Shown: positions 5,171 to 63,000 of the stretch, in pieces
Layout: each line of letters opens with the position of its first letter
Numbering within the stretch: position 1 is the first letter of the stretch
Source: Ylistrum balloti
Lineage: Eukaryota
Assembly: GCF_031769215.1 (NCBI RefSeq)
Contig: NW_026782303.1
Location: 310,001 to 374,000 of the forward strand
Reading direction: 5' to 3'
DNA length: 64,000 nt
The notes under the pieces: generated by a model
What the model was told of the DNA's origin: nothing
Database searches by the model: none
Seen by the model: only the letters and a program-made list of their open reading frames with translations
Program-made: the position numbers and the translations under genes

Positions 5171-7199
5171 TAAGTGTTGATCAATTATCATTCCGAGGAA
5201 TTAATAACGAAACATTCACAAACGTTAAGATGACATCAGACAGCACATCCGGATAGCTTAACACAAAAATGGTGGTCCACAGTTTTTGTACATATTGCAA
5301 ACTACTGAAACCGAAACGAAAACAAAATTGATTTTTTTTTTTTAAGTGATGCATTCCTATCACTGCATGATTAGGCTTTTTACGGTATATGTAAAGCAGC
5401 ATCATTAGAATAAATTTGTGAATCCAATTTAAATAAATCGGAATGTGTATTTACAAAGAATTACATGGCGGATGCCATCGGTGAAACAGAAGACGGAACA
5501 CGTGATCTTGTTCTCTTTGTAATTTTTCAGGAATCCTCTAATATTATTAATAACTTTTGAATATTGCATCTCCAGGCACGCGCGAATATTGCAAGATTCA
5601 GAACAGCTAAATTAGTAGTTCAATAAGGAAATTTTTCATCGAAAACATGTTGTTTGAACATTTGCAGTTCCAATATTGTAAAATCATATCAAATCCAATT
5701 TTCCTATCAATGTATAAAGCTTAAAAACAACCTGACGGCATTAATTTCCCTGCAACCTTATCGAAATGTGGTAATTCAGGTGAGGTCATTGACACAACTG
5801 AAAACGTGGCATAAGCTCTTCCGATGATTTCCATTAGATATGATATTAACCAACTTTTTGTTGGGGATTGATCGCAGCTCACATTTAAAGGAAATTTAAT
5901 AGCTTCTAGCTTTAGCAATCGACATCACATTTTCAGTGCTTATAGGAATACAGCTTTTTTGAAAGTTCTGTCATAACTTTTTCAGGAATCCGATATTTGC
6001 TAAAACTTTCTTTGAATCGGAAATGAAAGAGATTAAATTAAACATTAGACAAGCGAGAGGACAGGCTTTTTCATTACAAATTGAGGATTAGATAGCCAAA
6101 TGATAAATTAGTCTTCATCCTACAATTTTTTCGTCCTTCTAGGCCTAGTCAGATATGTTAAAGACCAAAATGATTGAAACCATGGAGGCGACTGAACAAA
6201 TAAACTAATTCTAAAACCAGATGAGTTGATGCAATAACCCCCGAAAATGCAATAAACTTGGCAAATTTCGATATCGAATAATCGTGATAATTAAGGGTAC
6301 ACGCTACAAAAGTCAGCATTATGCCATATTAGATACTAAATCTCGACTTATCAGAAGACGGTGCAACTGGCTGTTTTATAAAGTAACTTTAGTAATCGCA
6401 TTCAATGATATGACCGAGATAAAATCAATAAATCAATAGTTCTATACATGTTGGTCGCTCTGCTGCGTCTCAATGATTTTCCAGGTTACAGACATCACAT
6501 GATTAAAATAATAATTTCAAAACAATTTGTCATTGTCATCTGAAACAAAACGAAACGAATCCCAATAAACAGCATCAGGTATTAACAATATTTATGGTAG
6601 TATAATGACGTATCTGCAGAACAGTGCAATCAGCAGCGATCAACAGCTAGCAGTGCTCCCACACCCAGCAAATAGCTGATGAGATAAGCTAGGGGAAAAA
6701 ACTCGACAGAAATGAATATGTAACGAAACATACAAGGAAATGCGTACAGAGAGTCGACTCCTGTACGCTGTGAGGGTATTTAAGTCACGTATAAAGGTTA
6801 TAGGTCTTACCAATATGTTTGGTGCAATGAAAGATTTCTGTTGTCTGTAATATGAAATAACACTAGTATATTTACAAGGTGTGTTTTTTATTTAATCTTA
6901 AGCCGTATACATCTCCTATTTGACCCATTGTCATTGGCGATGTCACTTGCTTTCTGTGACAATGATACTGTCATGATTAGGTTCATTAGTTTCTTCTCAA
7001 TTTGGAGCTATGAATAAAATGAAATAATCAAATGACGATTTGCCGCTTTTTAATTCCTTTATCGTGTCAAACAGTTGAGATTGGCATTCCCCGTATTCGG
7101 CTGGGCCATACGTTCTCTACATATTTGTATATACGGATGAGCGAAGACCAACTTCAGCACATAACATGCAATGCGCCATTGAAAACATCGAGAGAATAC

Positions 7200-14771: not shown

Positions 14772-17700
14772 GTATGAACAAGAAACGTTTTGTCATAGTT
14801 TGCAGATAAAAAATTGCTTTATTGAGGTTTTGTTGTGTATGAATAAGTTGTGAAGTATGTTGTTACGGGGAATAATTGTATTGAATCAAAATATCGAGGA
14901 TTTACGAGGATCCTAAAATCGAGATTTAAAAGAATCAAATGATTCAATTAAGGACCTTTATATCGAGGTTTTACATTATAAGATTGTGGACCCTTATATC
15001 GAGGTTTTATATTATAAGATTGATGACCCTTATATCGAGGTTTTACATTATAAGATTGATGACCCTTATATCGAGGTTTTACATTATAAGATTGTGGACC
15101 CTTATATCGAGGTTTTATATTATAAGATTGATGACCCTTATATTGAGGTTTTACATTATAAGATTGAGGACCCTTATACCGAAATTTTACATTATAAGAA
15201 TGATGACCCTTATATTGAGGTTTTACATTATAAGATTGTGGACCCTTATATCGAGGTTTTATACTATAAGATTGATGACCCTTATATTGAGGTTTTACAT
15301 TATAAGATTGATGACCCTTATATCGAGGTTTTACATTATAAGATTAAGGACCCTTATATCGAGGTTTTATATTATAAGATTGATGACCCTTATATCGAGG
15401 TTTTACATTATAAGATTAAGGACCCTTATATCGAGGTTTTATATTATAAGATTGATGACCCTTATACCGAGGTTTTACATTATAAGATTGATGACCCTTA
15501 TACCGAGGTTTTACATTATAAGATTGAGGACCCTTATACCGAAATTTTACATTATAAGATTGAGGATCCTTATATCCACACTGTATTGTATATGAACGAG
15601 ATCCCTCATAACCAGGTTGTATTGTGTATGAACGAGGTCTCTCATATCCAGGCTATATTGTTGAACGATGTTCCTCATATCCAGGCTGTATTGTGTATGA
15701 CCGAGGTTCCTCATGTCCAGGCTGTATTTTGTATGAACGATGCCCTCATATCCAGGCTGTATTGTGTATGAACGAGGTCCCTCATATCCAGGCTGTATTG
15801 TGTATGGACGAGGTACCTCATATCCAGGTTGTATTGTGTATGAACGAGGTCCCTCATATCCCGGTGGTATTGTGTATGAACGAGGTCCCTCATAACCAGG
15901 TTGTATTGTGTATGGACGAGGTACCTCATATCCAGGTTGTATTGTGTATGAACCAGGTTCCTCATATCCTGGTTGTATTGTGTATGAACGAGGTCTATCA
16001 TATCCTGGTTGTATTAAGTATGAACGAGGTCCCCCATATCCAGGTTGTATTGTGTATGAACGAGGTACCTCATAACCAGGTTGTATTGTGTATGAACGAG
16101 GTCTCTCATATCCAGGCTATATTGTTGAATGATGTTCCTCATATCCAGGCTGTATTGTGTATGACCGAGGTTCCTCATGTCCAGACTGTATTTTGTATGA
16201 ACGATGCCCTCATATCCAGGCTGTATTGTGTATGAACGAGGTCCCTCATATCCAGGCTGTATTGTGTATGGACGAGGTACCTCATATCCAGGTTGTATTG
16301 TGTATGAACGAGGTCCCTCATAACCAGGTTGTATTGTGTATGGACGAGGTACCTCATATCCAGGTTGTATTGTGTATGAACGAGGTTCCTCATATCCTGG
16401 TTGTATTGTGTATGAACGAGGTCTATCATATCCTGGTTGTATTAAGTATGAACGAGGTCCCCCATATCCAGGCTGTATTGTGTATGAACGAGGTCCCCCA
16501 TATCCAGGCTGTATTGTGTATGAATGAGGTACCTCATATCCAGGCTGTATTTTGTATGAACGAGGAACGTTTCGTCAAAGTTTGCAGATGAAAAATATAG
16601 TTTATTGAGGTTTTGTTGTGTATGAATATGTTGTGAAGTATGTTTTTACTGGGTTTAATTGTATTGAATCAAAATATCAAGGATTTACTACATATGGTGA
16701 GTATTTTCAGTAAGTGAAAATCGGTCCTTATATCGGAGCTTTTACTGTATGTAAACGAGGATCCTAAAATCGAGATTTAAAAGAATAAAATGATTAAATT
16801 AAGGACACTTATACCGATGTTTTATATCATAAGATTGTGGACCCTTATACCGAGGTTTTACATTATAAGATTGATGACCCTTATACCGAGGTTTTACATT
16901 ATAAGATTGATGACCCTTATACCGAGGTTTTACATTATAAGATTGATGACCATTATACCGAGGTTTTACATTATAAGATTGATGACCCTTATACCGAGGT
17001 TTTACATTATAAGATTGATGACCCTTATATCGAGGTTTTACATTATAAGATTGATGACCCTTATATCGAGGTTTTACATTATAAGATTGTGGACCCTTAT
17101 ATTGAGGTTTTATATTATAAGATTGATGACCCTTATATCGAGGTTTTACATTATAAGATTGATGACCCTTATATCGAGGTTTTACATTATAAGATTGATG
17201 ACCCTTTTACCGAGGTTTTATATCATAAGATTGTGGACCCTTATACCGAGGTTTTACATTATAAGATTGATGACCCTTATATCGAGGTTTTACATTATAA
17301 GATTGATGACCCTTATACCGAGGTTTTACATTATAAGATTGATGACCCTTATACCGAGGTTTTACATTATAAGATTGATGACCCTTATACCGAGGTTTTA
17401 CATTATAAGATTGATGACCCTTATACCGAGGTTTTACATTATAAGATTGATGACCCTTATATCGAGGTTTTACATTATAAGATTGATGACCCTTATACCG
17501 AGGTTTCACATTATGAGATTGTGGACCCTCATATCGAGGTTTTACATTATAAGATTATGGACCGTCATATCGAGGTTTTACAGTATAAGATTGTAGACCC
17601 TTATATCGAGGTTTTACATTATAAGATTGTAGACCCTTATATCGAGGTTTTACATTATAAAATTGTAGACCCTTATATCGAGGTTTTACATTATAAGATT

Positions 17701-18864
17701 GTGGACCCTTATATCTAGGTTTTACATTATAAGATTAAGGACCCTTATACCGAGGGTTTACACTATAAGATTGATGACCCTTATACCGAGGTTTTATAGT
17801 ATAAAATTGTGGACCCTTATACCGAGATTTTACATTACAAGATTGTGGACCCTTATACCGAGGTTTTATATCATAAGATTGTGGACCCTTATACCGAGGT
17901 TTTACATTATAAGATTGATGACCCTTATACCGAGGTTTTACATTATAAGATTGATGACCCTTATACCGTGGTTTTATATGATAAGATTGTGGACCCTTAT
18001 ACCGAGGTTTTACATTATAAGATTGTGGACCCTTATACCGGGGTTTTACATTACAAGATTGATGACCCTTATATCGAGGTTTTACATTATAAGATTGATG
18101 ACCCTTTTACCGAGGTTTTATATCATAAGATTGATGACCCTTATACCGAGGTTTTATATTATAAGATTGATGACCCTTATACCGAGGTTTTATATTATAA
18201 TATTGATGACCCTTATACCGAGGTTTTACATTATAAGATTGATGACCCTTATACCGAGGTTTTACATTATAAGATTGAGGACCCTTATATCCAGGCTGTA
18301 TTGTGTATGAACGAGGTCCCTGATATCCAGGTTGTATTGTGTATGAACGAGGTCCCTCATACCCAGGCTGTATTGTGTATGAACGAGGTCCCTCATATCC
18401 AGGCTGTATTGTGTATGAACGAGGTCTATCATATCCTGGCTGTATTGTGTATGAACGAAGTCCCTCATGACCAGGCTGTTTTGTGTATGAACGAGGTCCC
18501 TCATATCCTGGCTGTATTGTGTATGAACGAAGTCCCTCATATCCTGGCTGTATTGTGTATTAACGAGGTCCCTTATGACCAGGCTGTATTGTGTATGAAC
18601 GAGGTCCCTCATATCCTGGCTGTATTGTGTATGAACGAGGTCCCCCATATCCAGGCTGTATTGTGTATGAACGAGGTCCCTCATATCCAGGCTGTATTGT
18701 GTATGAACGAGGTCCTTCATATCCAGATTTTACTATATCAGAAAGCGGACCCTTATATCGAAGTTTCAATGTATATTAACGATAACCCTGATATCCAGAT
18801 TTTACTGTATGAGAAAGAGAGCCTTTATATCGAGGGTTTACTGTACTATCGTGCACTTGTTTAG
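14772..18864. repeat. Composite 36-bp minisatellite: two tandem cassettes of [spacer - A array - B array]
   Basis: A monomer GACCCTTATATCGAGGTTTTACATTATAAGATTGAT (~14952-15580 and ~16800-18290). B monomer GTCCCTCATATCCAGGCTGTATTGTGTATGAACGAG (~15581-16560 and ~18291-18725). The spacer 14772-14950 is repeated at 16558-16800. Diverged 36-bp monomers follow at 18726-18864. Confidence 0.95.
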
Positions 18865-31650: not shown

Positions 31651-31770
31651 TTAACGTCAGAGCTGATACTTTAAATCTACCAGGAATGTAATTACAATAG
31701 CCACTGCCATGGTGAAATAAAGGATAAAAAGAAGCTTATTAGTTAGTAATCTATTTGGTGACACCTGTGA

Positions 31771-31994
31771 TGTCGACATCGTTTTGTAATATCTCTGGTG
31801 AAATCATTACATATCTGATACCTCATGTCTGATATTAAGGTCAATGTCGACATCGTTTTGTAATATCTCTGGTGAAATCATTACATATCTGATACCTCAT
31901 GTCTGATATTAAGGTCAATGTCGACATCGTTTTGTAATATCTCTGGTGAAATCATTACATATCTGATACCTCATGTCTGATATTAAGGTCAATG
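31771..31994. repeat. Three identical tandem copies of a 74-bp unit
   Basis: tgtcgacatcgttttg...ttaaggtcaa starts at 31771, 31845 and 31919; no mismatches seen. Confidence 0.95.
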
Positions 31995-33084
31995 ACAATT
32001 AAATGTGTTACCAGAATAATGTATATAAGGTGATGAGAGAAGACAAACGAACAGATACACAAGTGAATTGCAAATTTAAATACAACTTAAGTATGAGATA
32101 CAGTACAGCCAAATTACTAATTAAACTACAAATGAAACATGTGCACTTTACGGGTCGCCTGAGTAAGTTATTATTAAGTTTTATGGTATTTTCGGTCAGC
32201 TGTGATAGATGTACTCAATGCAGTCGCTAGGATACGGTTGTGTCTTGAGTTTCTTTTAAGGAAAAAAAATAAGAATAACTATCTTCATCTAAACCTACTG
32301 TCATATGTTAGCAATGACATGCTTTCAAAGTAAAAACGAGGATAAGTAGTGATGCAGAAAGGATTAAGGGAGCATAGCTGAAAAAACAATCTTCATTATG
32401 ACACTTCAATCTACACCATTAGTTCGAAATTAGGATTCTATGTCAACTTTGCCAATGTTGGAGTGAGTTCTGGGTCTATGGCGTTAACTAAGGAACACAT
32501 GAGTGAATGGTATAACTAGGAACACCTTCATTAGTGATATCTGCGAAAAAATATATTGTTAGAAAAACAGTAGAAAGTGTTGTTTTCGAGAATGTAATTA
32601 AATCGGGAAACAGATCTATACTGACAATTAGAAAAATAGAGATTACCATGATTAATGTCATACATTCCATGAAAACTATTTCCAGCATTTAGTAAAACTA
32701 AGAAAACCATTGAGAGGTGTAAAAAGGTGTAATTTATTCTAAATAACTACAAAAATCAGGGCTCCATGTAAACGTAATCTTGGATTTTCTGAAGGCCGTT
32801 ATGCCAGACATGCACATTTTTGAAATATTTAACATTCTGTTGAAATACCAACCAAAAGTCTGGGAAGACTTTTCTCTTGTCCTGCTTTGAAATATTGTAA
32901 AATGTTCTTTTAAAAGATACTTGATCCTGGATTTGTATCATTTACTACGGGCAATAGCGTCTTATTTGAATTTACGGGAATGGTAGAAATTTGGGTTAAG
33001 TGGTTGTTATGTGACCTATTAGTACATTCACTTGGCGTGATGAAGTAGTATAACCAGTAATTTTTAGTATGCTCAAAATGATTT

Positions 33085-35115: not shown

Positions 35116-35145
<30 letters not shown>
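35116..35145 (+). repeat. Poly(G)30 tract
   Basis: 30 consecutive G in an otherwise AT-rich region. Confidence 0.9.
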
Positions 35146-42059: not shown

Positions 42060-42250
42060 TCCATAAAGACACACACGTGAATAGCACCTTTTAATGATTT
42101 GGAGTTAGATGCAGTATAACCAAACAATGAATGAACTTGATCATACAGCTGTTGCTAAGGACTTTGAAGCCTATAAGGCTACTGAACAAAATCTCGAAGA
42201 GATCGAAAGAAAAGTGAAAATCTAGACGTGGAGGTGCAGCAGCCCCATAA
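42060..42250 (+). repeat. Dispersed repeat family R2 (second copy at 60415-60610)
   Basis: aaagacacac.(a/c)gtgaatagca..catacagc..tt(t/c)gaagcctat.aggc..gaaagaaaagt.aaaatct..(c/t)gtggaggtgcagcagccccata is shared with 60415-60610. Confidence 0.75.
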
Positions 42251-43602
42251 GTAAATAAAGGATTTAAATACCTATCACTACTTTCTTCTTGTCTTTAATT
42301 TGTGGTTGATTTTTATTTCTTTCTTTCTGCTTTTTTAAATGTCGACTCAATTGATTTTCTTTAGTTGGTCCTGTATATTCCAGATATTTTATTTGATAAG
42401 TTCATTATCTTACACACCTAGCTCTTTGTCAACAATCATTTATCGTTATATGCATCATGTACTATGTATTGCTAAAAGTTTTAAAAATGGTTAGAAATTA
42501 TTTTTGAAAAAATCTGAATCGTCATATGCATATACTATGTATTGCTAAAACTGAAAAAATGAATAGAAAAAAAATAAAAATGCAATTTAAACTGACGTAA
42601 AATTGTTCAAACAATGAAATCACAAAATGATATACGGTCTTTAAAACACAGTGTAATCATTCATCTAAATTCTATGACCTTCCTCCCAAGATAAATACTA
42701 AAGTACATTCACTTTTAATTCTTTGATAAGTATATAAGCTAAACAAATCTGGTTAATTAATTCAAATCACCAATTAACTCAATGCCCTTAATTCCATACC
42801 TATGTTCGTTTGATCTTGTACTCTTTCAGTGCTAACAATGTGATTTATTTTTAGACGCCATTGTTGTTGTCCGTGCTGGCTTTACAATAGTCACCAATCA
42901 AATCTGTAATCTTATATACTACTATAGAAGATGAGGTTGATCAAGTGACGTCAGCGATGTTTCAGTGATTAATGCTTTAGTACACAACGACGTGGCGGTC
43001 GCTGACCTGTTCACTACTGGTGACGATGCATTATTAAAGTGATTGATGTGTAAGGGGATCCGATTCAGACACGACTTAGTCACGTTTTCTTAACAAGACT
43101 TTCGTTATTTTCTTTTAATTAATGAGGAGTTGGCACATGCAATGAAAAATATACAGACGTGATTAGTTATAGTGCAAAGGATACACAAACTTAGAAATGA
43201 AGAATACTTACAAGAAGAGTGGGTGTCATCACTACGGATGACGCTGTATGTTATGCATTGTCAGCAAAATTGATTTCAATAACAATCAACAAAACAGACA
43301 AAACCACTACACGACGAATTATGATATAAACCATGTTTCCTTGATAAGAATTTTACTGATTTTGTTAAATAATTTCACGCTTAACAAACAAAAAGAATAT
43401 GTTGTATCTTTATACGACCAACAAATGAATTTAATTTTTTTTAATTCTATATGTTAGACGGATGCAAGTAAATGTTTTTACCTATCTTTTGTCATTTTTT
43501 TTTATATTTCAACCGTATACCGCTAGTATAGACCTTATAGTCTACCATATCATTACAAGTACTGACCTCTATCAAACGACCCAGACGTTTGTCTCACTGA
43601 TA

Positions 43603-43886: not shown

Positions 43887-45422
43887 TGTTTCGCGGAATG
43901 TGGACAACTATTCACGATAACTGAGATGTTTGTAAATTGTTGCCCTGATAGAAAGAGTACATCATAGAAATTTGAAAATAGACACTTACGCCAATAGTTA
44001 GATAATGAAAAATTAAATTGTGAAATTCCGTTTCTCTTTATTTAAAATATTTTCTTTATTTTCCTTGGTGTTGTAAATTTCACTTATATTATGCTTATGT
44101 CGTTTTTTCAATAATTTGAGGGAAAGATATTTTCTCGCTCATTATCTTTTGTAAAATTTCCTAATTTTCTCCGAAATCACAAATATTACTGTTAATAGAC
44201 ACCGCTCTTTAGACAACAAAAATTGGTAGAGTTTCACAGTTACAAATAAAATAAAGCGTTTTTCAACGAAATCAATCCCACAAAACATAACACAAACGCT
44301 TTTTCAAAATATTTCACAAAGTTTAAACGGTAAGTAAGAAAAAATAAGTAAAACATTACTACATGTAAAAAATGGTTTTTCTAGAGAAAATGTTCTTATA
44401 TATGATAAATGATATCTCAACAAAGAGTAGACATATTCCTTCTGTAATGGTAGCGTGACAACCCAATATGTACGAGAATGAAAATAGTGTTTGATCAAAT
44501 TAAAACTCTATAACAAGACCTAGGATAAAAATAGGCGCACATTTACTGTGGTTAATTCATTGAGTTCGTGTTAATGGGTTTTATTTTTTATTTTAAATTA
44601 TCGATCGTCACAGAAGTGCATGCCGTGATTGTGGTGTATATTGTATGTATCTACATATTTGTTGCCTGGCATAATATTGGCATTTATATCAATGATAGAA
44701 AATATTGAATTTGTACATCGATTACAGACAGGCTTATGGAAACTGACTTTCATTAATAAGTCATGAGAACTGGTCCTGATACTAAATAGAACCTGGAAGC
44801 CACGTGTATGCTAGGTGCCTATTTGTTGTAAAAGTAAAAATAAAAAGGCATTGTATTGATTATTCGGCAAAATGTGTCAAAACTTTACGGTACACAATAT
44901 CGATTTAACGATAGAAAGCGGTTTGTTTGAAAAATAAATTAATGTGATGAGATGGAACGCTTTCTTATTGTGTGAGTGAAGCTGCAAATGCCGTGCAATA
45001 CCTCACGAACGTGATAACCTGACATGCCACTAGTACGGCCAAATTACTGTGATGCTTTTCTGGGTGTGAAACTTTGTGTATGCGCATGCGCGCTGGCAAA
45101 TTTCGGGGGAAAGGTATTGATACAACTTCATAGTATATAAAGTACAAATTAGGTTGGGCTCTACACTTCATCTAGTTAAGACATTCGGATATCTAATATG
45201 TTAAACCTTGAAAAAATTAATTTGGACTTTGGAAAATAATTACTGTGTAACTAAGGCAGAATGATTTCATCGTTGTGTGTTGCATCACGCTTGAGGTTAC
45301 GGTATTACAGTTTTAACAGAATTCACCAAAATGAATTCTGCTATGGTAAGGAGCATCAGCTTGTTTAATCATATGAAACTAACGTTACAATCTACAATTT
45401 GAAAAGGATACAGCGATTCCGG

Positions 45423-46832
45423 ATGAGTACATTAACAGTACCAGTGCCCACTGGGGAATTTAGGAGAAGAAGTTTAAGCGGTGATCGAAACTTTCACTTC
45501 AAGAGAAAGAAGACATCAAACTCATTAGAACACCCAAGCGTGCTAAATAAGTTAATAACTGGATTTCTCCTTCGGAAAATTATTTTTGCTATGATCGTTA
45601 TATTTGTGGTGTTAGCATATTTCTCTGTCAGCCTAACCATTTCTTACAGAGATATGTCGACAGGTAAAGAGAGTATGGACTCTGATATGGATTTGTGTTC
45701 CTTGACTGCAAAATCTGCTAATATCTACAACGATATAAAACGGGTTAAAATGACGGGAAGATTGGCTGAGTTGTCTTATATTCGTGCGAGAGAAGATCTC
45801 CTACAGAGCTTTGATTTCACTAAAAAGCATAAAAGTCCATTTGAAAATGCGTCATATCCGACGAAAGGAGATATGCGTGTTATCTTACAACGACACAAGG
45901 AAGGGAAAACGACAGACGAGGAAAAAATAAATAAGTACCCATTTTCCTTTATATTAAATCCGTCTGGTCAATGTGATGAAACTCCAAATTCTGAACAAAA
46001 TATTTATTTGTTGTTTATAATTAAATCATTATCATCACATTCAAGGAGAAGAAATGTCATTCGGAATACTTGGACTAACAACACCTTCATCAACGGGTAC
46101 ACAGTTAAGAGAATATTTATCTTTGGTCAAGGTAACGATAGCAACGATGTTAATGCAGCATTGAAATCCGAAGCTGCCTTATTCGGAGATATATTACAAA
46201 TGAATTTAGTGGACAGCCACCGTAATAGCACGTGGAAATCACGTGGTGGATTGAAATGGGCTTCAGAAAACTGTTTTGGTGCGAAATACGTGATGTTAGT
46301 GGATGATGATTATTATGTGGCGACTGATTTGGTGATTCAGCTTCTGGAGTTTACTGGTAAACTAGACAACTTGTATATGGGCGTGGTTAACTGGCGACCT
46401 TCACCCTTCAGGTCAAAGGTTAGTAAATGGTATATTTCGCCCGAGGAATATCCCTACCCAGTCTATCCTGCGTTCGTAAGTTCAAGTGCTCTTCTGATGT
46501 CTATGGATTTCGTTATAAACTTTAATATAGCCAGCATGTATACGAAACATTTTATATTTGATGACGTATTTCTTGCAATTGTGGCTTCCAAATTAAACGT
46601 TTCCCCTATAAGCAATAAACTATTTTATCGCGGGAATATTCCATACATCAATAAATTATTTGAAACCACACTTGCCTGTCACGGCTTTGATACACCAACT
46701 GGTTTATACAATGCATGGATGATACATATGTTGGTGAGGTGTTATGGACGAAATATTGTCAATCATTTTCTGATGAAAACAGGTAACCGACGATCAAATC
46801 TGCCCGATCTTGGACGTTTATATAGAAGTTGA
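45423..46832 (+). CDS. Beta-1,3-galactosyltransferase-like glycosyltransferase (GT31 family), intronless, type II membrane protein, ~469 aa
   Basis: Single TM segment IIFAMIVIFVVLAYFSVSLTI followed by LLFIIKS..RRNVIRNTW, FGDILQMNLVDSHRNSTWKS..LKW, YVMLVDDDYYV, YPYPVYPAFVSS and FDDVFL. First ATG at 45423 (the ORF track starts from TTG at 45399). Confidence 0.92.
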   Translation: MSTLTVPVPTGEFRRRSLSGDRNFHFKRKKTSNSLEHPSVLNKLITGFLLRKIIFAMIVIFVVLAYFSVSLTISYRDMSTGKESMDSDMDLCSLTAKSANIYNDIKRVKMTGRLAELSYIRAREDLLQSFDFTKKHKSPFENASYPTKGDMRVILQRHKEGKTTDEEKINKYPFSFILNPSGQCDETPNSEQNIYLLFIIKSLSSHSRRRNVIRNTWTNNTFINGYTVKRIFIFGQGNDSNDVNAALKSEAALFGDILQMNLVDSHRNSTWKSRGGLKWASENCFGAKYVMLVDDDYYVATDLVIQLLEFTGKLDNLYMGVVNWRPSPFRSKVSKWYISPEEYPYPVYPAFVSSSALLMSMDFVINFNIASMYTKHFIFDDVFLAIVASKLNVSPISNKLFYRGNIPYINKLFETTLACHGFDTPTGLYNAWMIHMLVRCYGRNIVNHFLMKTGNRRSNLPDLGRLYRS

Positions 46833-49480: not shown

Positions 49481-50409
49481 TGCCCCTTTTGCAGAATATT
49501 CGTTCATTTCTGATGTCAATTTCAGGTCAGCTGCATATAATATTCCATTCAAAACATCAGATTTTATGTGTGCTCATCGTCAAAGTGGGGGAGGGAAGTG
49601 AAATTATCAAATTTTCAATAAAACTTCCATTTACCAAGATTTAAAAACGAATCGTTATTTATATTTGGCAAATAACAGACCTTAAATAACTCCGGAGGGC
49701 CTGATCAAATCACCTCTAATAGGTGACATTAGTGCATTTTCAATTTTAATCTGATTTTTACCGGAGAATGTTTTTTTCTGATTTTGATGGAAACACTTTG
49801 AATGTCTTATCCTTCGTTGTATATCTAAGAAACTATTGTAAAACAGTTGTAGTTTTAGGCCTCAATTTCCACCATTGTGTTGTGCAGTAGTATTGCAAAC
49901 TATTTGTGAGCTGGCTTGAGCTGAACTGAAATGGAAACAGTCGTGTAAAAGCGTAATACACATAGAAAGCTTCAAGTAGTCGATTGAAACCTGTATGCTT
50001 TAGTTTAATTAATTGTTTCGCACTTCCGTGTCTCACTCTAAAGTTGTATTAAAAGGCATTATTAATATGCATCTCTTTTTCAAGAATCTTCACGAAGATT
50101 GCAGATGCCATGTTTTATATTACTTGACTTTTCTCTAAAATTATTAGAAATATAGAAATTACGAAATCTAATTAATTATGGGGTTAATGCACCTCCCCAT
50201 ATCAATTTTGACATTTATTTCGGTGCAAATACGCGGTTGTGGACTATGATGGAACGTGAACATATCCAGATAGATATACTGAGGAGGAAGACTATTGGAA
50301 ATTTGTATCGCCACTGACGTGATCTCAATGGGAAAAATCATATTTCCTTGTTCAGTATAAAGGTACATGCTCTTTAGCATACATGGTAATTCTTTTTCGT
50401 TAATTTCTC

Positions 50410-50645
50410 TATAAGATTTATTTATTAAGCAACAATTGCGAAACAAGTTATTTCAACTAAACCGATTGCTAACCACTCTTGTTGTCCTAGACGTAAACGA
50501 GAGAGTGATCTTTGTGTTGTTGGAAACCGAAGTGCTCGTGGGAAACCTATGTGGTTGGCAGGTGACACCCTACCTTTTAACGTCCGTGCGGAAAATCCAA
50601 CCCCAGAATTGAAAGGCGAGTGCATTACCACTACGCCACCCGACA
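50410..50645 (-). mobile_element. tRNA-derived SINE with conserved central-domain-like motif
   Basis: Minus strand: GGTGGCGTAGTGGTAATGCACTCGCCTTTCA (A-box, tRNA-like head), ggtttcccacgagcacttcggtttcc (resembles the GGTTT.C.CCGGG..CTCCGGTTTCC core of V-/Meta-type SINEs) and an AAT-rich tail near 50420. Confidence 0.75.
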
Positions 50646-51994
50646 ACTCTTTTGCTGATGTCGTTTGTGTCTTCTGAGGACGAGTGTCATCTATAAAGAT
50701 GATGACGCTCACCATTCGGGAAAAATCATGCATGGTTTTAAGGCTCTCCGAGTAACTGTTTCTTTGTGCATTGTTTGCCTTCCTGTCATCGATTTGGTGT
50801 TTGAATTAAGATTCTCTCGACGTATCAATATTTTCTGAGATAATGGAGTCTAGTTCTCTACAGTGCTATATTAAATACAGACTTTTATGTGTCAGTGTAT
50901 TAAACACAGTTGTTCATCATTATTATTTCAGCTCCCTCTCTTACTACAAAGGATAATTACCATACACAGCAACGATGTAAGGGCTTGGAGCACTGGGCCT
51001 ACATCTTCTCGGAGTCACTGTTTTTATTACTATGTTGATCAATAATTCATCCTTGTAGCAGTCAAAAACAACTCAATCGATCTATTTTTGAATACCTATA
51101 CAATCCCGTGGTATTTGGATACTGTGTTTGGTACATACCGTGTCTGTTGTGCTAAATTAACAATAGCACGGAATATACTGGCGAGCCATTCCGGTGTTTT
51201 CCTTGACCCCTGTAACAGAGGACTTCTTGACTTTGATTGTCCAGGATTTGGTAACCAGTCATGGGGATAATGTAAACATATCGTGCGATCTTCAACAAAC
51301 AAACAAGTAATAATGATTGTCTGAGACACTTGTTTTCGGGGTGGCATTGTACCTTACGTCGGGAAGACGTCTGATCTGGTAATTACGATGGTAGACTACA
51401 CTATATACAAATAAACACCATCTATTCGATAGGCATTGGTTTAGTGCTTTAAAGTTCCAGAGTGACGGTAGCCTCATTAATTATTAAATAAGGTAGAGAT
51501 AACCACTTCAACAACTTTTACAGATAGTTAGAATTATTCTGACGTTCTAATAGAATTTCTTATGACAAGAGAGTAAGCAACCCATACCTTGATCAACATT
51601 CTAGCAATAATTGTAGAAAGAAACAAGAAAATCTACATGTTTGTGTGCATTTCAAAAGTCCAGAAAAGTCATATTCTGTTTTATATTCGTTATCACTTCC
51701 ATAATAGTAAAGTAAATCGGTGTACAAGATTTCATTAATCTTAATTAATAGAACGCCTGGACATCGATTGTTATTTGGAATACTAGTTCAATATTTTCAC
51801 TTTTTTAAAAATCGTTAGCAATATTTATTGATATGTCAATTCGCATTATAAAATAAAATTCCCAGCTGATTAATTTACTCACTTATCCGCCTTATAGTAT
51901 AATTTAAATTCGACCCATTGTTATTTTTCACGATGACCAATTGTGACAATTGTGATTCTCCACGATCACCTCCTAGATTTCAACATTAGGTGCA

Positions 51995-52533
51995 TAGCCT
52001 CATTGACGAGTCCTAGAAGGACGAAACAGCTGTATGATGTAGCATCACTGACGAGTCCTAGAAGGACAAAACAGCTATATGACGTAGCATCACTGACGAA
52101 TCCTAGAAGGACGAAACAGCTGTATGATGAAGCATTAGTGACGAATCCTAGAAGGACGAAACAGCTGTATGATGCAGCATCACTGACAAATCCTAGAAGG
52201 ACGAAACAGCTGTATGATGTAGCATCACTGACGAGTCCTAGAAGGACGAAACATCTGTATGATGCAGCATCACTGACGAATCCTAGAAGGACGAAACAGC
52301 TGTATGACGTAGGATCACTGACGAGTCTTAGAAGGACGAAACAGCTGTGGGATGTAGCCTCAATGACGAGTCCTAGAAGGACGAAAAGCAGTATGACGTA
52401 GCATCACTGACGGGTCCTAGAAGGACGAAACAGCTGTAGGATGTAGCATCACTGACGAGTCCTAGAAGGACGAAACAGCTGTAGGATGTAGCATCACTGA
52501 CGAGTCCTATAAGGATGAAACATCTGTATGATG
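51995..52533 (+). ncRNA. Tandem array of 12 x 45-nt minimal hammerhead ribozyme units
   Basis: Consensus unit TAG-CATCA-CTGACGA-GTCC-TAGAA-GGAC-GAAAC-AGCT-GTA-TGATG contains the full hammerhead core (CUGAnGA, GAAA, NUH=GUA), stem II GTCC/GGAC, stem I CATCA/TGATG and a palindromic stem III ACAGCTGT. Units start at 51995, 52040, 52085, 52130, 52175, 52220, 52265, 52310, 52355, 52399, 52444 and 52489. Confidence 0.88.
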
Positions 52534-54164
52534 CAGTTTGATTCATTATCTAAAAGTATCTTGTTATGTATTTGTATTGAAATGTGCTTTATACGTGTGT
52601 GCCTCTTGTTCTGTCCTTTCATTCGGTTATAAAGTTAGTGACAATATAAAAATGTTACAATACTTTTGAAAAATCCCAAACGAAATTATTGCACAAGATG
52701 CATTGTAATTTTTCTAATGTCGCTCCCTATGGACCCAGGGTCTGGAATAATCTATAAACTGGTACGAAGGCGATCAAGATAATCAATAAATAACTGATCG
52801 ATAATTCTCTTAAATACATCGCATTATCTAGATTTTCACAGACCAAAATACACATAAGTACATGATTGAATAAGCGATTATAAATTGTGATGATAACGAT
52901 AATCGTTAAGTTATGGTTATCTTTTCGGCATAAGCTGGCCTCGAAATCGATAAAGCGATGATAAGCTATCGATAATAGAATTTTTTACATGTGCAAAACA
53001 AAACAGTCATGTGCCTCGGAAGGGGTGATTGGTTTTTTATTCACTGATAATGTCAATCTACATTTTCCAAAATATTACCGATGTAATAATGAATTAGTAC
53101 ATTTACCTGAATCACCCTGGCTTTCTGAAAATGATTTTTAAAATGGTTGTGGTGTGAAATATCAATGTTGTTTTCGTTTGAAAGAAAGATTAATGTAATC
53201 CGATTTCAGGTCGATACAACATATCTTCAACTTAATTATTTACAGTAAACCAGTAAGCCTTGACAAATAATGAAGTAGTTGAGAGTTGTTAGACCTGACA
53301 CTATCTCTGTCCATAAGCGTCATTTGGTTAAATTAATGTCACGATTATACCATAGGTAAAGTGCAGGCTGTCCGTCCAGTAATCCTGCATTGGCTTCTTT
53401 GACAAAGATATAAGGTGTATCATACAGAGCGCCATCGACTGTAGGTATGTGCCTGACTTAACGCCTGGTACAGAGTTCTTCAATACTCAATATAGAACGA
53501 ACCCTAGAGACCAAAGTTCTATGTCACACGGTTCCAGTCTGGAAAAGCTGAACTATTTTTTTTTTTTTTTTTTTTTTTGTATTATTTCTACGTGGAGCTT
53601 CAGCTGTCGATAAATGTGTGTCAGGAACCATACACTATTTGTTAAAGAAAGATGTGTTGGGTAAGCGTTTACTAGCAGTAATAAAGTCGTTCTCGTGGTT
53701 TTAGAAAACGACTTTCGTAGCAAAAAGTATTATGGTGAAAATGTAGCATTTCATTTTCTTTTAAGTATCGAGTTACCGATAAAACGTGTACATATATTTT
53801 GTTTCCAATAAATTTCGAAGAGTTTGAACTCTTTTGATATTAAAGTACATAGTTATTGTAATGGTACCGACAATTTTAATTGTTTCTTTACTTTCTACAT
53901 CAGCTGCTAAACACGGTCAGCTTTCCGCCAAGCTTTTTGACAACGGGTATCGGTTCTAATTTCCCTATAATGAATTTTCCATGTCTGGATAGCAACATTC
54001 TGCAAACACAACTTATGGTATTTACGTGTTGCAGTTGATTCGATATCCATGTGCCTGTTCCCATTGTCGCGATTTTCTTGCGCAAATTCGTCAACTGACG
54101 GACAAATTCGTTTTCAAAATATGCAGGTTGACGAGAATTCGGGGTCGCCAGAGTAACCTCATTG

Positions 54165-55587: not shown

Positions 55588-55739
55588 CTCTATATCAGAT
55601 TAACTACATGTCAAGATATAGACAGAACAAGGATCACGTGTCTCTATGTCACATTGACTACACGTCAATATATAGACAGAACAAAGATCACGTGTCTCTA
55701 TATCACATTGACTACACGTCAATATATAGACAGAACAAA
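55588..55739. repeat. ~2.8 tandem copies of a 54-bp unit
   Basis: actaca(t/c)gtcaa(g/t)atatagacagaacaa.. starts at 55603, 55657 and 55711; the unit contains a CACGTG E-box. Confidence 0.9.
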
Positions 55740-60096: not shown

Positions 60097-63000
60097 ATGG
60101 CATCCATGACTTTTATGCCTTATGTTGACAAGGAGAATGCTGGCTCTTTAGGAATCCATCCAGGCAAGGGGCAACAACGGACAACATCTGGTCTTGGAGG
60201 TGTGTTAAAGACAAAGACTTTGTGATCTTTATGCTAATACACATACTGCTGTGTATATATAGACATCTGTATTTTGTGTGTTTCTGTATCATCTAGTGTA
60301 TACATAATACATCTATTTGAAAAATAGTACCAGTCAAAATATTTTGTGACTAGTCCTTACCAAAATTATTTTGTCCCACATATAAGACGTGTAGACAATC
60401 TGATTTTTCTGAAGATTGTATAAAAGACACACAAGTGAATAGCAATGTTTATTAGTTTTTATTTAGCTACAGTAGAGCCAAAATAATGCAAACAACTGCA
60501 TCATACAGCCCAAATTTCGAAGCCTATGAGGCAGCTGAGGAATCTCCAAAGGAATCTCCAAACGAAAGAAAAGTCAAAATCTTTATGTGGAGGTGCAGCA
60601 GCCCCATAGTTAAATTTTGAAATTTTCAACTATCAGACAACTTAAGAAAAGCTTCAAGTACATTCTGAACCATACCACTATTCAAATGAATGAAAAATTG
60701 GCATGCAGGTTACAGCAAACCTCAGGGATTTAGTCCATCAGCAGTGTCTGCCACCTGTTGTCTTAATGATTTTTTGAAATGTATCTTTATTTAGAAGGCA
60801 TATGCCTGTATTTAAAATCTTGATCAACAATAGTTTTGATGGTATTATATGATAATGTATTAATTATATAAGATACAGTATAGAACTTTTGGGTGTCTAT
60901 TCTAATCGATGTCAAGTCTGTTCAATTTTTCCTCTACTGTAACAATTGTAAAGTAATTGGTCATATGACAAAATGCATTGTTTTATAGGCAGCAAAGTTT
61001 TTGGAAGTTCTTCAAAACAGCTAGTGACGCCAAGGAAAGCCTTGGGCGATGTCAGCAACCGTGGTCTCAGCTTAAACTCTAACTCCAAAAATCTAAAACA
61101 ACAGAAGCCAGCATTCAAACCACCAGCATCACAACAGAGAAAGGGGTTGAAAGTACAAGGAAACAAACAGAGCAGTATTACACATGTAAGCCTGGTATTG
61201 GATATACATAATCACTCTCTATAGCAATGGCATCAGACCTATAAAGGCTGCTTCGACAGAACCAAAGGGACTGTCGAGTTAAGCTGTGTGACAGTCCATT
61301 CAAGAGAGATAGCCCGACTTCGGCAACATTAACAATATTTAAATTTTGAAAATTTAGTCAATAATTTGGTAGATATACTGTAAAAACCTATATTTTTGTT
61401 GGCTTCAAATTTCATGGTTTAACAAAAAAATTGCATTTTCATTGGCACTTGCTTACAAATGTAAGTATTGCTCAGCCAATCCATTAGTTCTGTAACCCAT
61501 GCCAAATTTCATATATCAATTTATCATTTCTTAGTGAGATATCAATGTATATTTTTTTTATTTATAATAACCTTGAATTCCACAAAAAGGAATCTCCACA
61601 ATAATTAATGATCTTGCAGAATATCATGATGTCTTTTATATAATAATCATGCACATTGTCAATATTGTTCATGTAGATATACACTTCTTCCTGTTCTAAT
61701 CTAATCCCATATTTAAAATCCCAGATCAGGCTTTTGCAGACATAACTACTTCCATTGCTTGCTTCAATTCCAGCCTAAAACAGTGACCAAGGCTGCTCCC
61801 ACTGAGCCTCATTATGATGAGATTGAACACATACACATTCCCAAGGAAATTGAAGGTATTGTGTTTAAACAAAAATAAGTAACACAAATGTTTAATTGAT
61901 ACAGTAGTAGCTTGCTTGGTTTTTGATGTAATAATCCACGTGATATTTTAGTACAGTATTTGCTGGTTGAAAATATATATGTGTGCCACATTTGCCATAA
62001 TTGACATGCAAGAACATTGGAAATATGCTGTCATATAACAGATAACATTTCTCTGGAGGATATCAAAGATTTATTCATCTTCTGTAAGATAAGAAGATTA
62101 GTGAAGATACCTCGGTGTTAGTGCTTCAACAATTGCCTGATATTTGGATATATCTTGACAATACGCAGCAGAGACATCTGGACATTTAAGTTGGATTAAA
62201 TGGTGTGAACATCCGTTGAAAGTACAATCAAACATTTATTGGATGACAAATGCTAAAATGTTGTAATTTGCATATAATTATTTTACATTTCTTAAAGCTT
62301 AGATCATAGATAAATTATGAACCCCAGTCACGACCAGCAATCAGATAATTATGAATCAATTTCACTCATTAATTATTCAGATGATTCAAACATATTATTG
62401 ATCAAGATGACAGAAGTTAAAGATGATAAAATTTGGAAACTGCAGCAGTTGCTGTAGAGTATTTGTTTCAAACTAATATACATACTATTTTCTTTAACTA
62501 GAACTTTAACTTTTCAGCTCATTATCAATACAATAAATTTTGAAAAACACTTAAGAAAATTTATATATAAGAACACATATTTGTCAAGGAAAATCGACGT
62601 GGGCCCTCATAGTCATGGAATTATTGTATCTCTGATAATATTTGTTAACATTAAAATTGTTATTTGTTATCATTGAATATTGATGTTTTAATAGATGACG
62701 ATTTTGAGGATATTTGGCCAAAGTCTGAGAGAATAAGCTCATATATTTCACAACTGATCAGCTGGCGCCCGCCCTGTCTGTTCAGTCACCTGCCTGATTC
62801 TGGTGATGAAACTGATGAAGAGGAGGAGCGAAAAAAGAGAATGGAGAACTTGGACAATGTCTTGGAAAATATGCCCAAACCTCTTTCCACTGTTTGTGAG
62901 TAACTACAATCATTTTCATGGGGAGGTTCACAACAAAACCTGCAATGAAACTTTGTCACCATGGTATCATAACATTAATGTAGGTATTAGAATCTTATTC

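What the first reader, a model, noticed from the sequence alone, without database searches (positions are those of the whole stretch)
51995..52533. A satellite built entirely of hammerhead ribozymes: 12 head-to-tail 45-nt units with no spacer
Seen in sequence: each 45-bp unit reads TAG CATCA CTGACGA GTCC TAGAA GGAC GAAAC AGCT GTA TGATG. This is the canonical hammerhead core (C3-U-G-A-n-G-A9; G12-A-A-A), with a 4-bp stem II, a GUA cleavage triplet, a 5-bp stem I (CATCA/TGATG) and a self-complementary stem III (ACAGCUGU). Established: minimal type I hammerheads with palindromic stem III occur in Penelope-like elements and animal non-LTR retrozymes and cleave as dimers; described retrozyme monomers, as far as I recall, run to roughly 150-400 nt with intervening sequence. 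Here the ribozyme is the whole monomer. Inference: a plus-strand transcript can fold either as type I units (weak 2-bp stem III, rescued by dimer pairing) or as overlapping type III ribozymes. In the latter, unit n supplies GUA/UGAUG and unit n+1 the core, giving an 8-bp stem III, a loop 1 starting with U and a loop 2 ending in A, the usual tertiary-contact signature. Cleavage would release 45-nt monomers with 5'-OH and 2',3'-cyclic phosphate ends that RtcB-type ligases could circularise. This could be an ultra-minimal retrozyme or viroid-like replicon, or a self-destructing transcriptional insulator. Novelty needs a literature check.
Basis: partly seen in the sequence, partly recalled or inferred. 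Interest (0 to 1): 0.92.

Follow-up and report, generated by a model that had tools for sequence, protein, structure and literature searches.

The report
Hammerhead ribozyme minisatellite inside a retrozyme
This 540-base repeat really is twelve back-to-back copies of a 45-base self-cutting RNA motif, but it is one decayed copy of a small mobile element found thousands of times in this invertebrate genome, and the repeat appears to have grown mainly as ordinary repeat DNA.

Summary
Window 51995-52533 is 12 head-to-tail 45-bp units (89% alike), each a minimal type I hammerhead. Two neighbouring units together form a complete type III hammerhead.

It is not a free-standing satellite. The array is the multiplied ribozyme module of a dispersed, non-coding element of about 385 bp, with a left arm, one or more units, and a right arm. 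Many copies carry a single unit. Copies are 5'-truncated and often sit in partial tandems, which points to retroposition. A 30-nt block in the left arm matches the published Mytilus retrozyme, which makes circular RNAs.

In this copy no junction-spanning ribozyme is flawless, and only 2 of 12 units keep both the core and the G10.1-C11.1 pair. Across the family, core positions vary as much as other positions. One 33-unit array multiplied units carrying three linked inactivating changes. So at least some growth was ribozyme-independent, at the DNA level.

The idea of a 45-nt replicon or an insulator is unsupported but not excluded: 869 perfect two-unit ribozymes exist genome-wide.

This scan has already reported the same array family at least six times on other pieces of this genome. 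I found no published description of spacerless hammerhead arrays.

The parts
51995..52533 (+). Array of 12 hammerhead units of 45 bp (unit 9 has 44). Units 6 and 11 keep the core and G10.1-C11.1. Units 3, 7 and 12 keep the core but have a weakened stem II. The rest carry core or cleavage-site mutations.
52431..52481 (+). Best junction-spanning type III hammerhead in the window: site from unit 10, core from unit 11. It has one defect, a G-A mispair at the first pair of stem I.
   Evidence: Rfam RF00008 43.6 bits, E 3.8e-8; MFE three-way junction -15.5 kcal/mol, z -2.3
52207..52257 (+). Second junction-spanning hammerhead: site after A52214 from unit 5, core from unit 6. It has one C-U mismatch inside stem III.
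   Evidence: Rfam RF00008 42.0 bits; weak fold, z -0.2
51947..51994 (+). 3' end of the element's left arm (profile positions 205-254), directly abutting the first unit.
   Evidence: nhmmer with the family profile; flank comparison
52534..52614 (+). Right arm of the element (profile positions about 300-382), which is the 3' end of the retroposon.
50121..50224 (+). Left-arm segment (profile 102-205), same strand and colinear with 51947-51994. It is probably the same copy, split by about 1.7 kb of unrelated DNA (50225-51946).
   Evidence: inference from colinear profile coordinates
49985..50081 (+). Decayed 3' part of a hammerhead plus right arm (profile 282-377) of an upstream partial copy, a pseudo-LTR-like partial tandem.
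60413..60749 (-). Nearly full-length single-unit copy of the same element family (profile 3-384).
42065..42259 (-). 5'-truncated copy of the same family (profile 148-374).
6048..6270 (-). Old 5'-truncated single-unit copy (profile 134-371) with a ruined core.
32052..32130 (-). Short copy starting a few bases from the ribozyme cleavage site (profile 298-373).

Best explanation
The array is the internally multiplied ribozyme module of one old copy of a non-coding, non-autonomous retroposon of about 385 bp.

The element consists of a ~254-bp left arm, a 45-nt minimal type I hammerhead, and an ~85-bp right arm. It belongs to the bivalve-type non-LTR retrozymes, the Penelope-dependent class described in mussels.

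Inferred steps:
1. A tandem duplication whose ends lie at the base of stem I produced elements with two or more spacerless units. This probably arose by microhomology (TAG on the left, CAG on the right), where the folded ribozyme brings both ends together.
2. Such elements spread by retroposition.
3. Arrays then changed length by slippage or unequal exchange, whether or not the units could still cut.

In RNA from intact arrays, each pair of neighbouring units would form a complete hammerhead and cleave after GUA. This is inferred, not shown. This particular copy is decayed, has probably been split by a later 1.7-kb insertion, and is most likely inert.
For: Arms and copy number:
- Conserved arms flank arrays at unrelated loci.
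- A left-arm search gave 2,127 first-look candidates, and all 40 that were scored (39 apart from the query's own locus) matched, at 73-82% identity.
- Of 19 left-arm loci, about 10 have exactly one unit and others have 5, 26 or 33.
- An alignment of 10 single-unit copies defines the element.

Retroposition:
- Profile mapping shows 3' ends fixed at 380-384 while 5' ends fall anywhere (1, 27, 53, 81, 133, 148, 205). Partial tandems and inverted pairs also occur.
- This matches the pseudo-LTR architecture described for Penelope-like elements (PMC8557442).

Link to the mussel retrozyme:
- A 30-nt block at the start of the left arm matches the published Mytilus galloprovincialis retrozyme consensus in 25 of 30 positions, including a 13-mer. 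The local score is 33 against 15.6 +/- 2.2 in 2,000 shuffles.
- Size and hammerhead architecture also match: 4-bp stem II, 5-nt loop, 2-bp stem III with a palindromic loop.

Ribozyme identity:
- Intact family units pass Rfam's type I gathering score (35.5 against 34).
- The perfect two-unit 51-mer scores 48.4 against 48.5 for type III.

Ribozyme-independent growth:
- In the 33-unit L018 array most units share linked U4A, C11.1A and A17G in a higher-order pattern.
- Core positions change as often as stems and loops: 0.063 against 0.05-0.075 in arrays, and 0.142 against 0.09-0.165 in single copies.
- In the window array, G10.1A is shared by units 3, 4, 5 and 7.
- All 13 arrays seen are attached to at least one arm.

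Other unit lengths, implying independent duplications with other end points:
- 49 nt in two other organisms, absent from this genome.
- 53 and 42 bp elsewhere in this genome.
Against: - Units in arrays are closer to the family consensus (90-98%) than the arms of the same copies (74-91%).
- No variant is fixed through a whole array.
- The same junction is used about 21,000 times. Growth in place from old single units does not explain these points well. They suggest arrays were inherited from array-bearing source copies, or are renewed by some other process.
- 869 perfect two-unit ribozymes exist, and one ~4-kb array has long runs of perfect units. Expansion is therefore recent in places, and an RNA route is not excluded.
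- The autonomous partner was not found. No copy of this ribozyme lies within 1.5 kb of 30 GIY-YIG endonuclease loci, and 20 of those loci scanned with Rfam gave no hammerhead hit.
- Whole-element folds are only weakly better than shuffles (z -1.2 to -1.5), unlike the highly self-paired retrozyme circles described.
- My sample of arrays is small and partly chosen through perfect-core matches.
Confidence: 0.72

Rival explanations
1. The tandem ribozymes are adaptive for the element. Two adjacent units give a solitary copy a complete ribozyme acting on its own transcript, so it no longer depends on a second full element nearby for dimer cleavage. Array-bearing source copies therefore out-competed single-unit ones. 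Later length changes are incidental.
For: - A single unit has only a 2-bp stem III, and such ribozymes are reported to act as dimers (PMC4209133; PMC6765202).
- Two units form a perfect 7-bp stem III.
- There are about 21,000 unit-unit junctions with one identical junction sequence, against 3,944 unit-to-right-arm junctions at the same stringency.
- Arrays occur in other species too.
- Units are better kept than arms.
Against: - Cutting inside the element would separate the left arm from the 3' end that reverse transcription needs, so the benefit is unclear.
- Core positions show no extra conservation.
- Array-bearing copies do not form one clean arm subfamily, though the sample is small.
- Dead units are multiplied.
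Confidence: 0.15
2. One reading: array transcripts cut themselves into 45-nt monomers, host ligase circularises them, and the circles are copied by rolling circle. This would make an ultra-minimal retrozyme or viroid-like replicon that seeds or extends arrays.
For: - The perfect 51-mer is a canonical hammerhead, and 869 exact copies exist.
- There are long arrays with runs of identical units.
- Mussel retrozyme RNA is circularised by RtcB in vitro (PMC7229834 supplement).
Against: - Every array inspected sits at the same place inside the element, with none orphaned.
- The initial duplication end points are not at the cleavage site.
- Units unable to cleave were amplified.
- No RNA evidence was found.
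Confidence: 0.07
3. The array serves the host, for example as a self-destructing transcript boundary or as a source of small RNAs at this locus.
For: None specific. The array lies about 5 kb downstream of, and on the same strand as, a galactosyltransferase ORF.
Against: - This copy has no flawless ribozyme.
- It is one of thousands of dispersed copies.
- Its flanks are unique and it shows ordinary decay.
Confidence: 0.02
4. It is one of the satellite-like repeats that bivalve DNA transposons carry (Helentron or MITE-type elements with a central tandem repeat), and the hammerhead likeness is incidental.
For: The layout of a left flank, a short tandem array and a right flank resembles those elements (my recollection of the bivalve literature, not tested here).
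Against: - 5' truncation with a fixed 3' end and partial tandems indicate retroposition.
- I saw no terminal inverted repeats in the aligned ends.
- All conserved hammerhead positions and three helices are present, and intact units pass Rfam's threshold.
- There is a shared block with the mussel retrozyme.
Confidence: 0.02

Closest known systems
Non-LTR retrozymes of metazoans, especially the Mytilus galloprovincialis retrozyme (350-390 nt; de la Pena, Ceprian and Cervera 2020, PMC7229834)
   Same: - A non-coding element of about 385 nt with one type I hammerhead that lacks loop-loop contacts.
- The same ribozyme architecture.
- A shared 30-nt block after the cleavage site.
- Dispersed solo copies plus tandems.
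- Coexistence with Penelope-type endonuclease genes.
   Different: - Here the 45-nt ribozyme alone, not the whole monomer, is repeated head to tail with no spacer, from 2 to more than 70 times.
- Described monomers are 170-400 nt.
- Circular RNA is not shown for this family.
Minimal hammerheads in pseudo-LTRs of Penelope-like elements, which act as dimers (Cervera and de la Pena 2014, PMC4209133; Lunse et al. 2017, not readable here)
   Same: - A diminished stem III with a palindromic loop, so that two copies pair to make an active ribozyme.
- A position near the 3' end of a retroelement.
- Partial-tandem and inverted insertion patterns (PMC8557442).
   Different: - No reverse transcriptase or endonuclease ORF is attached.
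- The two partners are immediately adjacent, so one transcript folds as an ordinary type III hammerhead rather than a long-range dimer.
Hammerhead-bearing satellites and SINE-like repeats (newt satellite 2, Dolichopoda pDo500, Schistosoma Sm-alpha)
   Same: Tandem or dispersed repeats whose transcripts carry a type I hammerhead. Double-hammerhead cleavage was proposed for the newt.
   Different: Those repeat units are roughly 330-500 bp, with the ribozyme a small part. Here the unit is the ribozyme.
Plant LTR retrozymes and viroid type III hammerheads (Rfam RF00008)
   Same: The junction-spanning fold matches the type III model over its full length, at 48.4 bits for perfect copies.
   Different: - There are no LTRs, primer-binding site or polypurine tract.
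- The type III topology arises only from the tandem arrangement of type I units.

Membership tests
Hammerhead ribozyme (Rfam RF00163 type I, RF00008 type III) | Conserved core C3-U4-G5-A6-N7-G8-A9, G12-A13-A14, A15.1-U16.1 and a non-G at position 17 | tested here: met
   Present in the unit consensus. In the window 5 of 12 units keep it. There are 2,454 exact 32-nt cores genome-wide.
Hammerhead ribozyme (Rfam RF00163 type I, RF00008 type III) | Score at or above Rfam's gathering threshold | tested here: inconclusive
   Window units reach 29.3 of 34 (type I) and 43.6 of 48.5 (type III), so no hit at gathering. Intact family units reach 34.6-35.5, which passes type I. The perfect 51-mer reaches 48.4, just under type III.
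Hammerhead ribozyme (Rfam RF00163 type I, RF00008 type III) | Mg2+-dependent self-cleavage after position 17 | not testable with these tools
   No experiment was possible. The fold of an intact pair is compatible.
Metazoan non-LTR retrozyme | Non-coding monomer of about 170-400 nt carrying a type I hammerhead | tested here: met
   A 385-position profile was built from 10 copies, with one unit at positions 255-299. No tRNA-like head was found.
Metazoan non-LTR retrozyme | Whole monomers arranged in head-to-tail tandem repeats | tested here: inconclusive
   Partial tandems are seen (L031, L035, L036, L038, window 49985-50224), and second ribozymes lie about 300-320 nt away (L017, L036). Most sampled copies are solitary and 5'-truncated.
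Metazoan non-LTR retrozyme | Sequence relation to a characterised retrozyme | tested here: met
   25 of 30 identities, including a 13-mer, with the Mytilus consensus. Score 33 against a shuffle maximum of 27. Only this block was tested, because the full consensus could not be entered.
Metazoan non-LTR retrozyme | Expression as self-cleaved circular RNA | not testable with these tools
   No run on record as RNA holds the stretch. One run guessed to be RNA has 354 contigs on the array.
Penelope-like element (autonomous) | Reverse transcriptase plus GIY-YIG endonuclease ORF flanked by pseudo-LTRs carrying the ribozyme | tested here: not met
   No such ORF adjoins the array. None of 30 GIY-YIG loci carries this ribozyme in its 3' region, and 20 of them scanned with Rfam gave no hammerhead hit.
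Free-standing satellite DNA | The array is the whole repeat family, without a conserved non-repeated context | tested here: not met
   All 13 arrays inspected abut the same arms, and many copies have one unit.
Viroid-like or rolling-circle 45-nt replicon | Propagation that requires self-cleavage, so only cleavage-competent units are amplified | tested here: not met
   The L018 array amplified units with U4A, C11.1A and A17G. There is no excess conservation of the core.

The most novel reading that the evidence does not exclude
Intact arrays of this family are transcribed and cut themselves, through the type III ribozymes formed by neighbouring units, into 45-nt RNAs with 5'-OH and cyclic-phosphate ends. 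A fraction of these RNAs is ligated into circles. There are 869 perfect two-unit ribozymes, including a ~4-kb array. The circles would be the smallest natural ribozyme circles known, and reverse transcription of them, or template jumping within arrays, would contribute to array growth.
Probability: 0.1. Interest if true: 0.75.

Novelty: new variant of a known kind. Interest (0 to 1): 0.4.

Why it matters
Hammerhead-bearing repeats in animals are known as 170-400-nt retrozymes and as Penelope pseudo-LTR motifs that must pair as dimers.

A family in which the ribozyme alone has become the repeat unit shows how a type I motif turns into a self-sufficient type III ribozyme by simple tandem duplication. 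It also offers a natural series of 2 to more than 70 spacerless ribozymes for testing co-transcriptional cleavage, small-RNA output and circularisation.

It links a scallop-type element to the experimentally studied mussel retrozyme through a conserved block of unknown function.

For this window itself the array is a decayed copy with no sign of a local role.

Tried and rejected
- Rfam at gathering threshold on the whole window gave nothing.
- Whole 295-bp flanks searched in the genome were unique. The shared arms only showed up when boundaries were compared directly.
- I looked for the autonomous partner through 51 GIY-YIG hits. The 30 loci fetched contain only incidental copies of the element. 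A core-motif scan of all 30 found one unrelated hammerhead-like core (L064), and an Rfam scan of 20 of them found no hammerhead at E up to 0.01.
Copy density, array-size distribution and 5'-end distribution therefore rest on the window and about 70 small loci.
- A test for copies starting exactly at the cleavage site found only 2 of about 23 unbiased copies starting near it (profile 297/298, site at 294/295). This is not significant.
- Adjacency of variant carriers within arrays was not above random expectation.
- The arm alignment did not separate array-bearing copies from single-unit copies.
- ARAGORN found no tRNA-like head.
- Whole-element folds are only marginally more stable than shuffles.
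- nhmmer of the family profile against the 65-nt mussel segment reported nothing, whereas a local alignment with shuffles was clear.
- Literature: no paper holds the core sequence, none joins hammerhead and scallop, and none describes spacerless hammerhead arrays. Lunse et al. 2017 is not held.
- Expression: no RNA run is on record, and the single reads call showed contigs only.

Full report
**Observation.** Window 51995-52533 reads as twelve head-to-tail units of 45 bp. Each unit has, in order:
- a 3-nt linker
- CAUCA
- the core CUGACGA
- a 4-bp stem II with a 5-nt loop
- GAAAC
- the palindrome AGCU
- GUA
- UGAUG

Rfam finds nothing at its gathering scores. With E-value reporting it finds the type III hammerhead model across unit junctions (43.6, 42.0 and 36.3 bits; gathering 48.5). 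It also finds the type I model on single units (24.6-29.3 bits; gathering 34).

**State of this copy.** Unit by unit:

| Unit | Changes |
|---|---|
| 1 | C3U |
| 2 | G12A |
| 3 | G10.1A |
| 4 | C3G, G10.1A |
| 5 | G8A, G10.1A |
| 6 | one change in the stem III palindrome; core intact |
| 7 | G10.1A |
| 8 | G at the cleavage position |
| 9 | C3A and a 1-nt deletion |
| 10 | A9G |
| 11 | one change in stem I; core intact |
| 12 | C11.1U and a stem III change |

None of the eleven junction-spanning ribozymes is flawless. The two best have one helix defect each (52207-52257 and 52431-52481). Only the second folds convincingly, with MFE -15.5 kcal/mol and z -2.3.

**Context.** The 32-nt core occurs 13,697 times in the 648.5-Mb genome at up to 2 mismatches, and 0 times in the reversed control. 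Of these, 2,454 are exact.

Comparing array boundaries at unrelated loci shows conserved sequence on both sides. A left-arm query had 2,127 first-look candidates. All 40 that were scored matched: the query's own locus at 100%, the other 39 at 73-82%. Among 19 loci found through the left arm, about ten carry exactly one unit and others carry 5, 26 or 33.

Ten single-unit copies align over about 385 bp: left arm 1-254, unit 255-299, right arm 300-384. Mapping a profile of these onto all held DNA shows three things:
- 3' ends are fixed at 380-384, while 5' ends fall anywhere. This is the signature of target-primed reverse transcription.
- Partial tandems occur, in which the end of a right arm and a short tail precede a full copy.
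- Inverted pairs occur.

This is the insertion architecture described for Penelope-like elements, whose hammerheads lie near the 3' end in pseudo-LTRs (PMC8557442).

The window alone holds at least six copies or fragments. The array-bearing copy has an upstream partial copy at 49985-50081. Its left arm seems to be split by about 1.7 kb of foreign DNA, with profile 102-205 at 50121-50224 and 205-254 at 51947-51994.

**Relation to a characterised element.** The supplement of de la Pena et al. 2020 prints the Mytilus galloprovincialis retrozyme consensus. Its stretch about 70-100 nt after the cleavage site matches the start of the scallop-type left arm in 25 of 30 positions, including a 13-mer and an 8-mer. 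The local score is 33, against 15.6 +/- 2.2 and a maximum of 27 in 2,000 shuffles.

The two ribozymes also share architecture, and the elements share size: 350-390 nt in the mussel, where the RNA accumulates as circles. I therefore file the element with the metazoan non-LTR retrozymes, with two reservations:
- Whole-monomer tandems are only partly seen here.
- No RNA evidence exists. No run on record as RNA holds the stretch, and the one reads call returned contigs only.

**How the array grew.** Three lines point to growth that does not need cleavage:
- The 33-unit array in L018 consists mostly of units with linked U4A, C11.1A and A17G, arranged in a higher-order pattern. Units that cannot cut were multiplied.
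- Over 171 units from 34 arrays, the twelve core positions change as often as stems and loops. The figures are 0.063 against about 0.05-0.075 in arrays, and 0.142 against 0.09-0.165 in single copies.
- All 13 arrays I could inspect are joined to an arm at the canonical place. None is an orphan, as integration of copied 45-nt circles would give.

The duplication end points (TAG on the left, CAG on the right of the ribozyme) are not at the cleavage site. They lie at the base of stem I, where the fold brings both ends together.

Other unit lengths exist:
- A 49-nt unit with four extra bases in the linker occurs in two other organisms. It is absent here.
- Periods of 53 and 42 bp are visible in the hit list of this genome.

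**What does not fit a purely neutral DNA story.**
- Unit-unit junctions number 21,344, against 3,944 unit-to-right-arm junctions at equal stringency, and all use one junction sequence.
- Units in arrays are nearer the consensus than the arms of the same copies.
- No variant is fixed through a whole array.
- 869 perfect 51-nt two-unit ribozymes exist, with long runs in a ~4-kb array on contig C48.

These points suggest that array-bearing source copies were themselves retroposed, and that some arrays are young. Whether tandem ribozymes help the element, by giving a complete ribozyme within a single solitary copy, is open. So is whether 45-nt RNAs are made.

**Partner element.** The genome has at least 51 GIY-YIG endonuclease matches. 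In 30 loci around them I found only incidental copies of this element. An Rfam scan of 20 of these loci found no hammerhead. The autonomous partner is unidentified.

**Novelty.** I found no paper with this sequence, none on hammerheads in scallops, and none on spacerless hammerhead arrays. One key paper (Lunse et al. 2017) is not held. Described retrozyme monomers run from about 170 to 400 nt.

The scan itself has already reported this array family at least six times on other pieces of this genome, with follow-ups reaching the same reading. I reached mine before reading them. Those notes call the organism a scallop. I did not test that.

**Verdict.**
The ribozyme topology holds. The free satellite or replicon does not.
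- The thing is a new variant of a known kind, and this copy is a decayed member.

Noticed in passing
window 14947-18845: About 3.9 kb of 36-bp tandem repeats in alternating blocks of two different 36-bp families, with 108-bp and 464-bp higher-order periods.
   Followed up: no
window 31770-31994: Three perfect copies of a 74-bp unit (100% matches), which suggests a very recent duplication. A short fragment of the hammerhead element lies just beside it at 32052-32130.
   Followed up: no
window 35116-35145 and 55588-55739: A run of 30 G, and a 54-bp repeat of 2.8 copies at 92%.
   Followed up: no
window 45399-46832 (+): An intronless ORF of 477 aa with a galactosyltransferase domain (PF01762, E 3.6e-38) lies 5 kb upstream of the array on the same strand.
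   Followed up: partly
G000:C4:355515-356881 and G000:C16:259330-259560: Arrays with the same stem I junction but periods of 53 bp and 42 bp, that is, other unit lengths of the same ribozyme repeat (hit list).
   Followed up: no
G000:C48:1206920-1210996: An array of about 4 kb with long runs of perfect two-unit ribozymes, apparently young (hit list).
   Followed up: no
G000:C422:240415-261997 (L052-L055, L069): Five GIY-YIG matches at about 5.3-kb spacing, four of them in open frames of 755 aa. This looks like a tandem array of intact Penelope-type elements.
   Followed up: no
runs X6, X7, X18 laid on window 51995-52533: In two other organisms many contigs carry a 49-nt unit with TCCC inserted in the linker between units. 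In a third organism contigs run from left arm through one unit into the right arm.
   Followed up: partly
start of the left arm, e.g. L031:1470-1510, L015:1715-1754 (-): A block (CACTGCTGGTGGA ... CCCCGAGG) is conserved between this family and the Mytilus retrozyme consensus. Its function is unknown, and it could be a promoter or a protein-binding site.
   Followed up: partly
window 32052-32130 (-), L064:685-768 (-): Short copies begin within a few bases of the ribozyme cleavage site, as expected if cleaved RNA were occasionally reverse transcribed. There are too few to test.
   Followed up: partly
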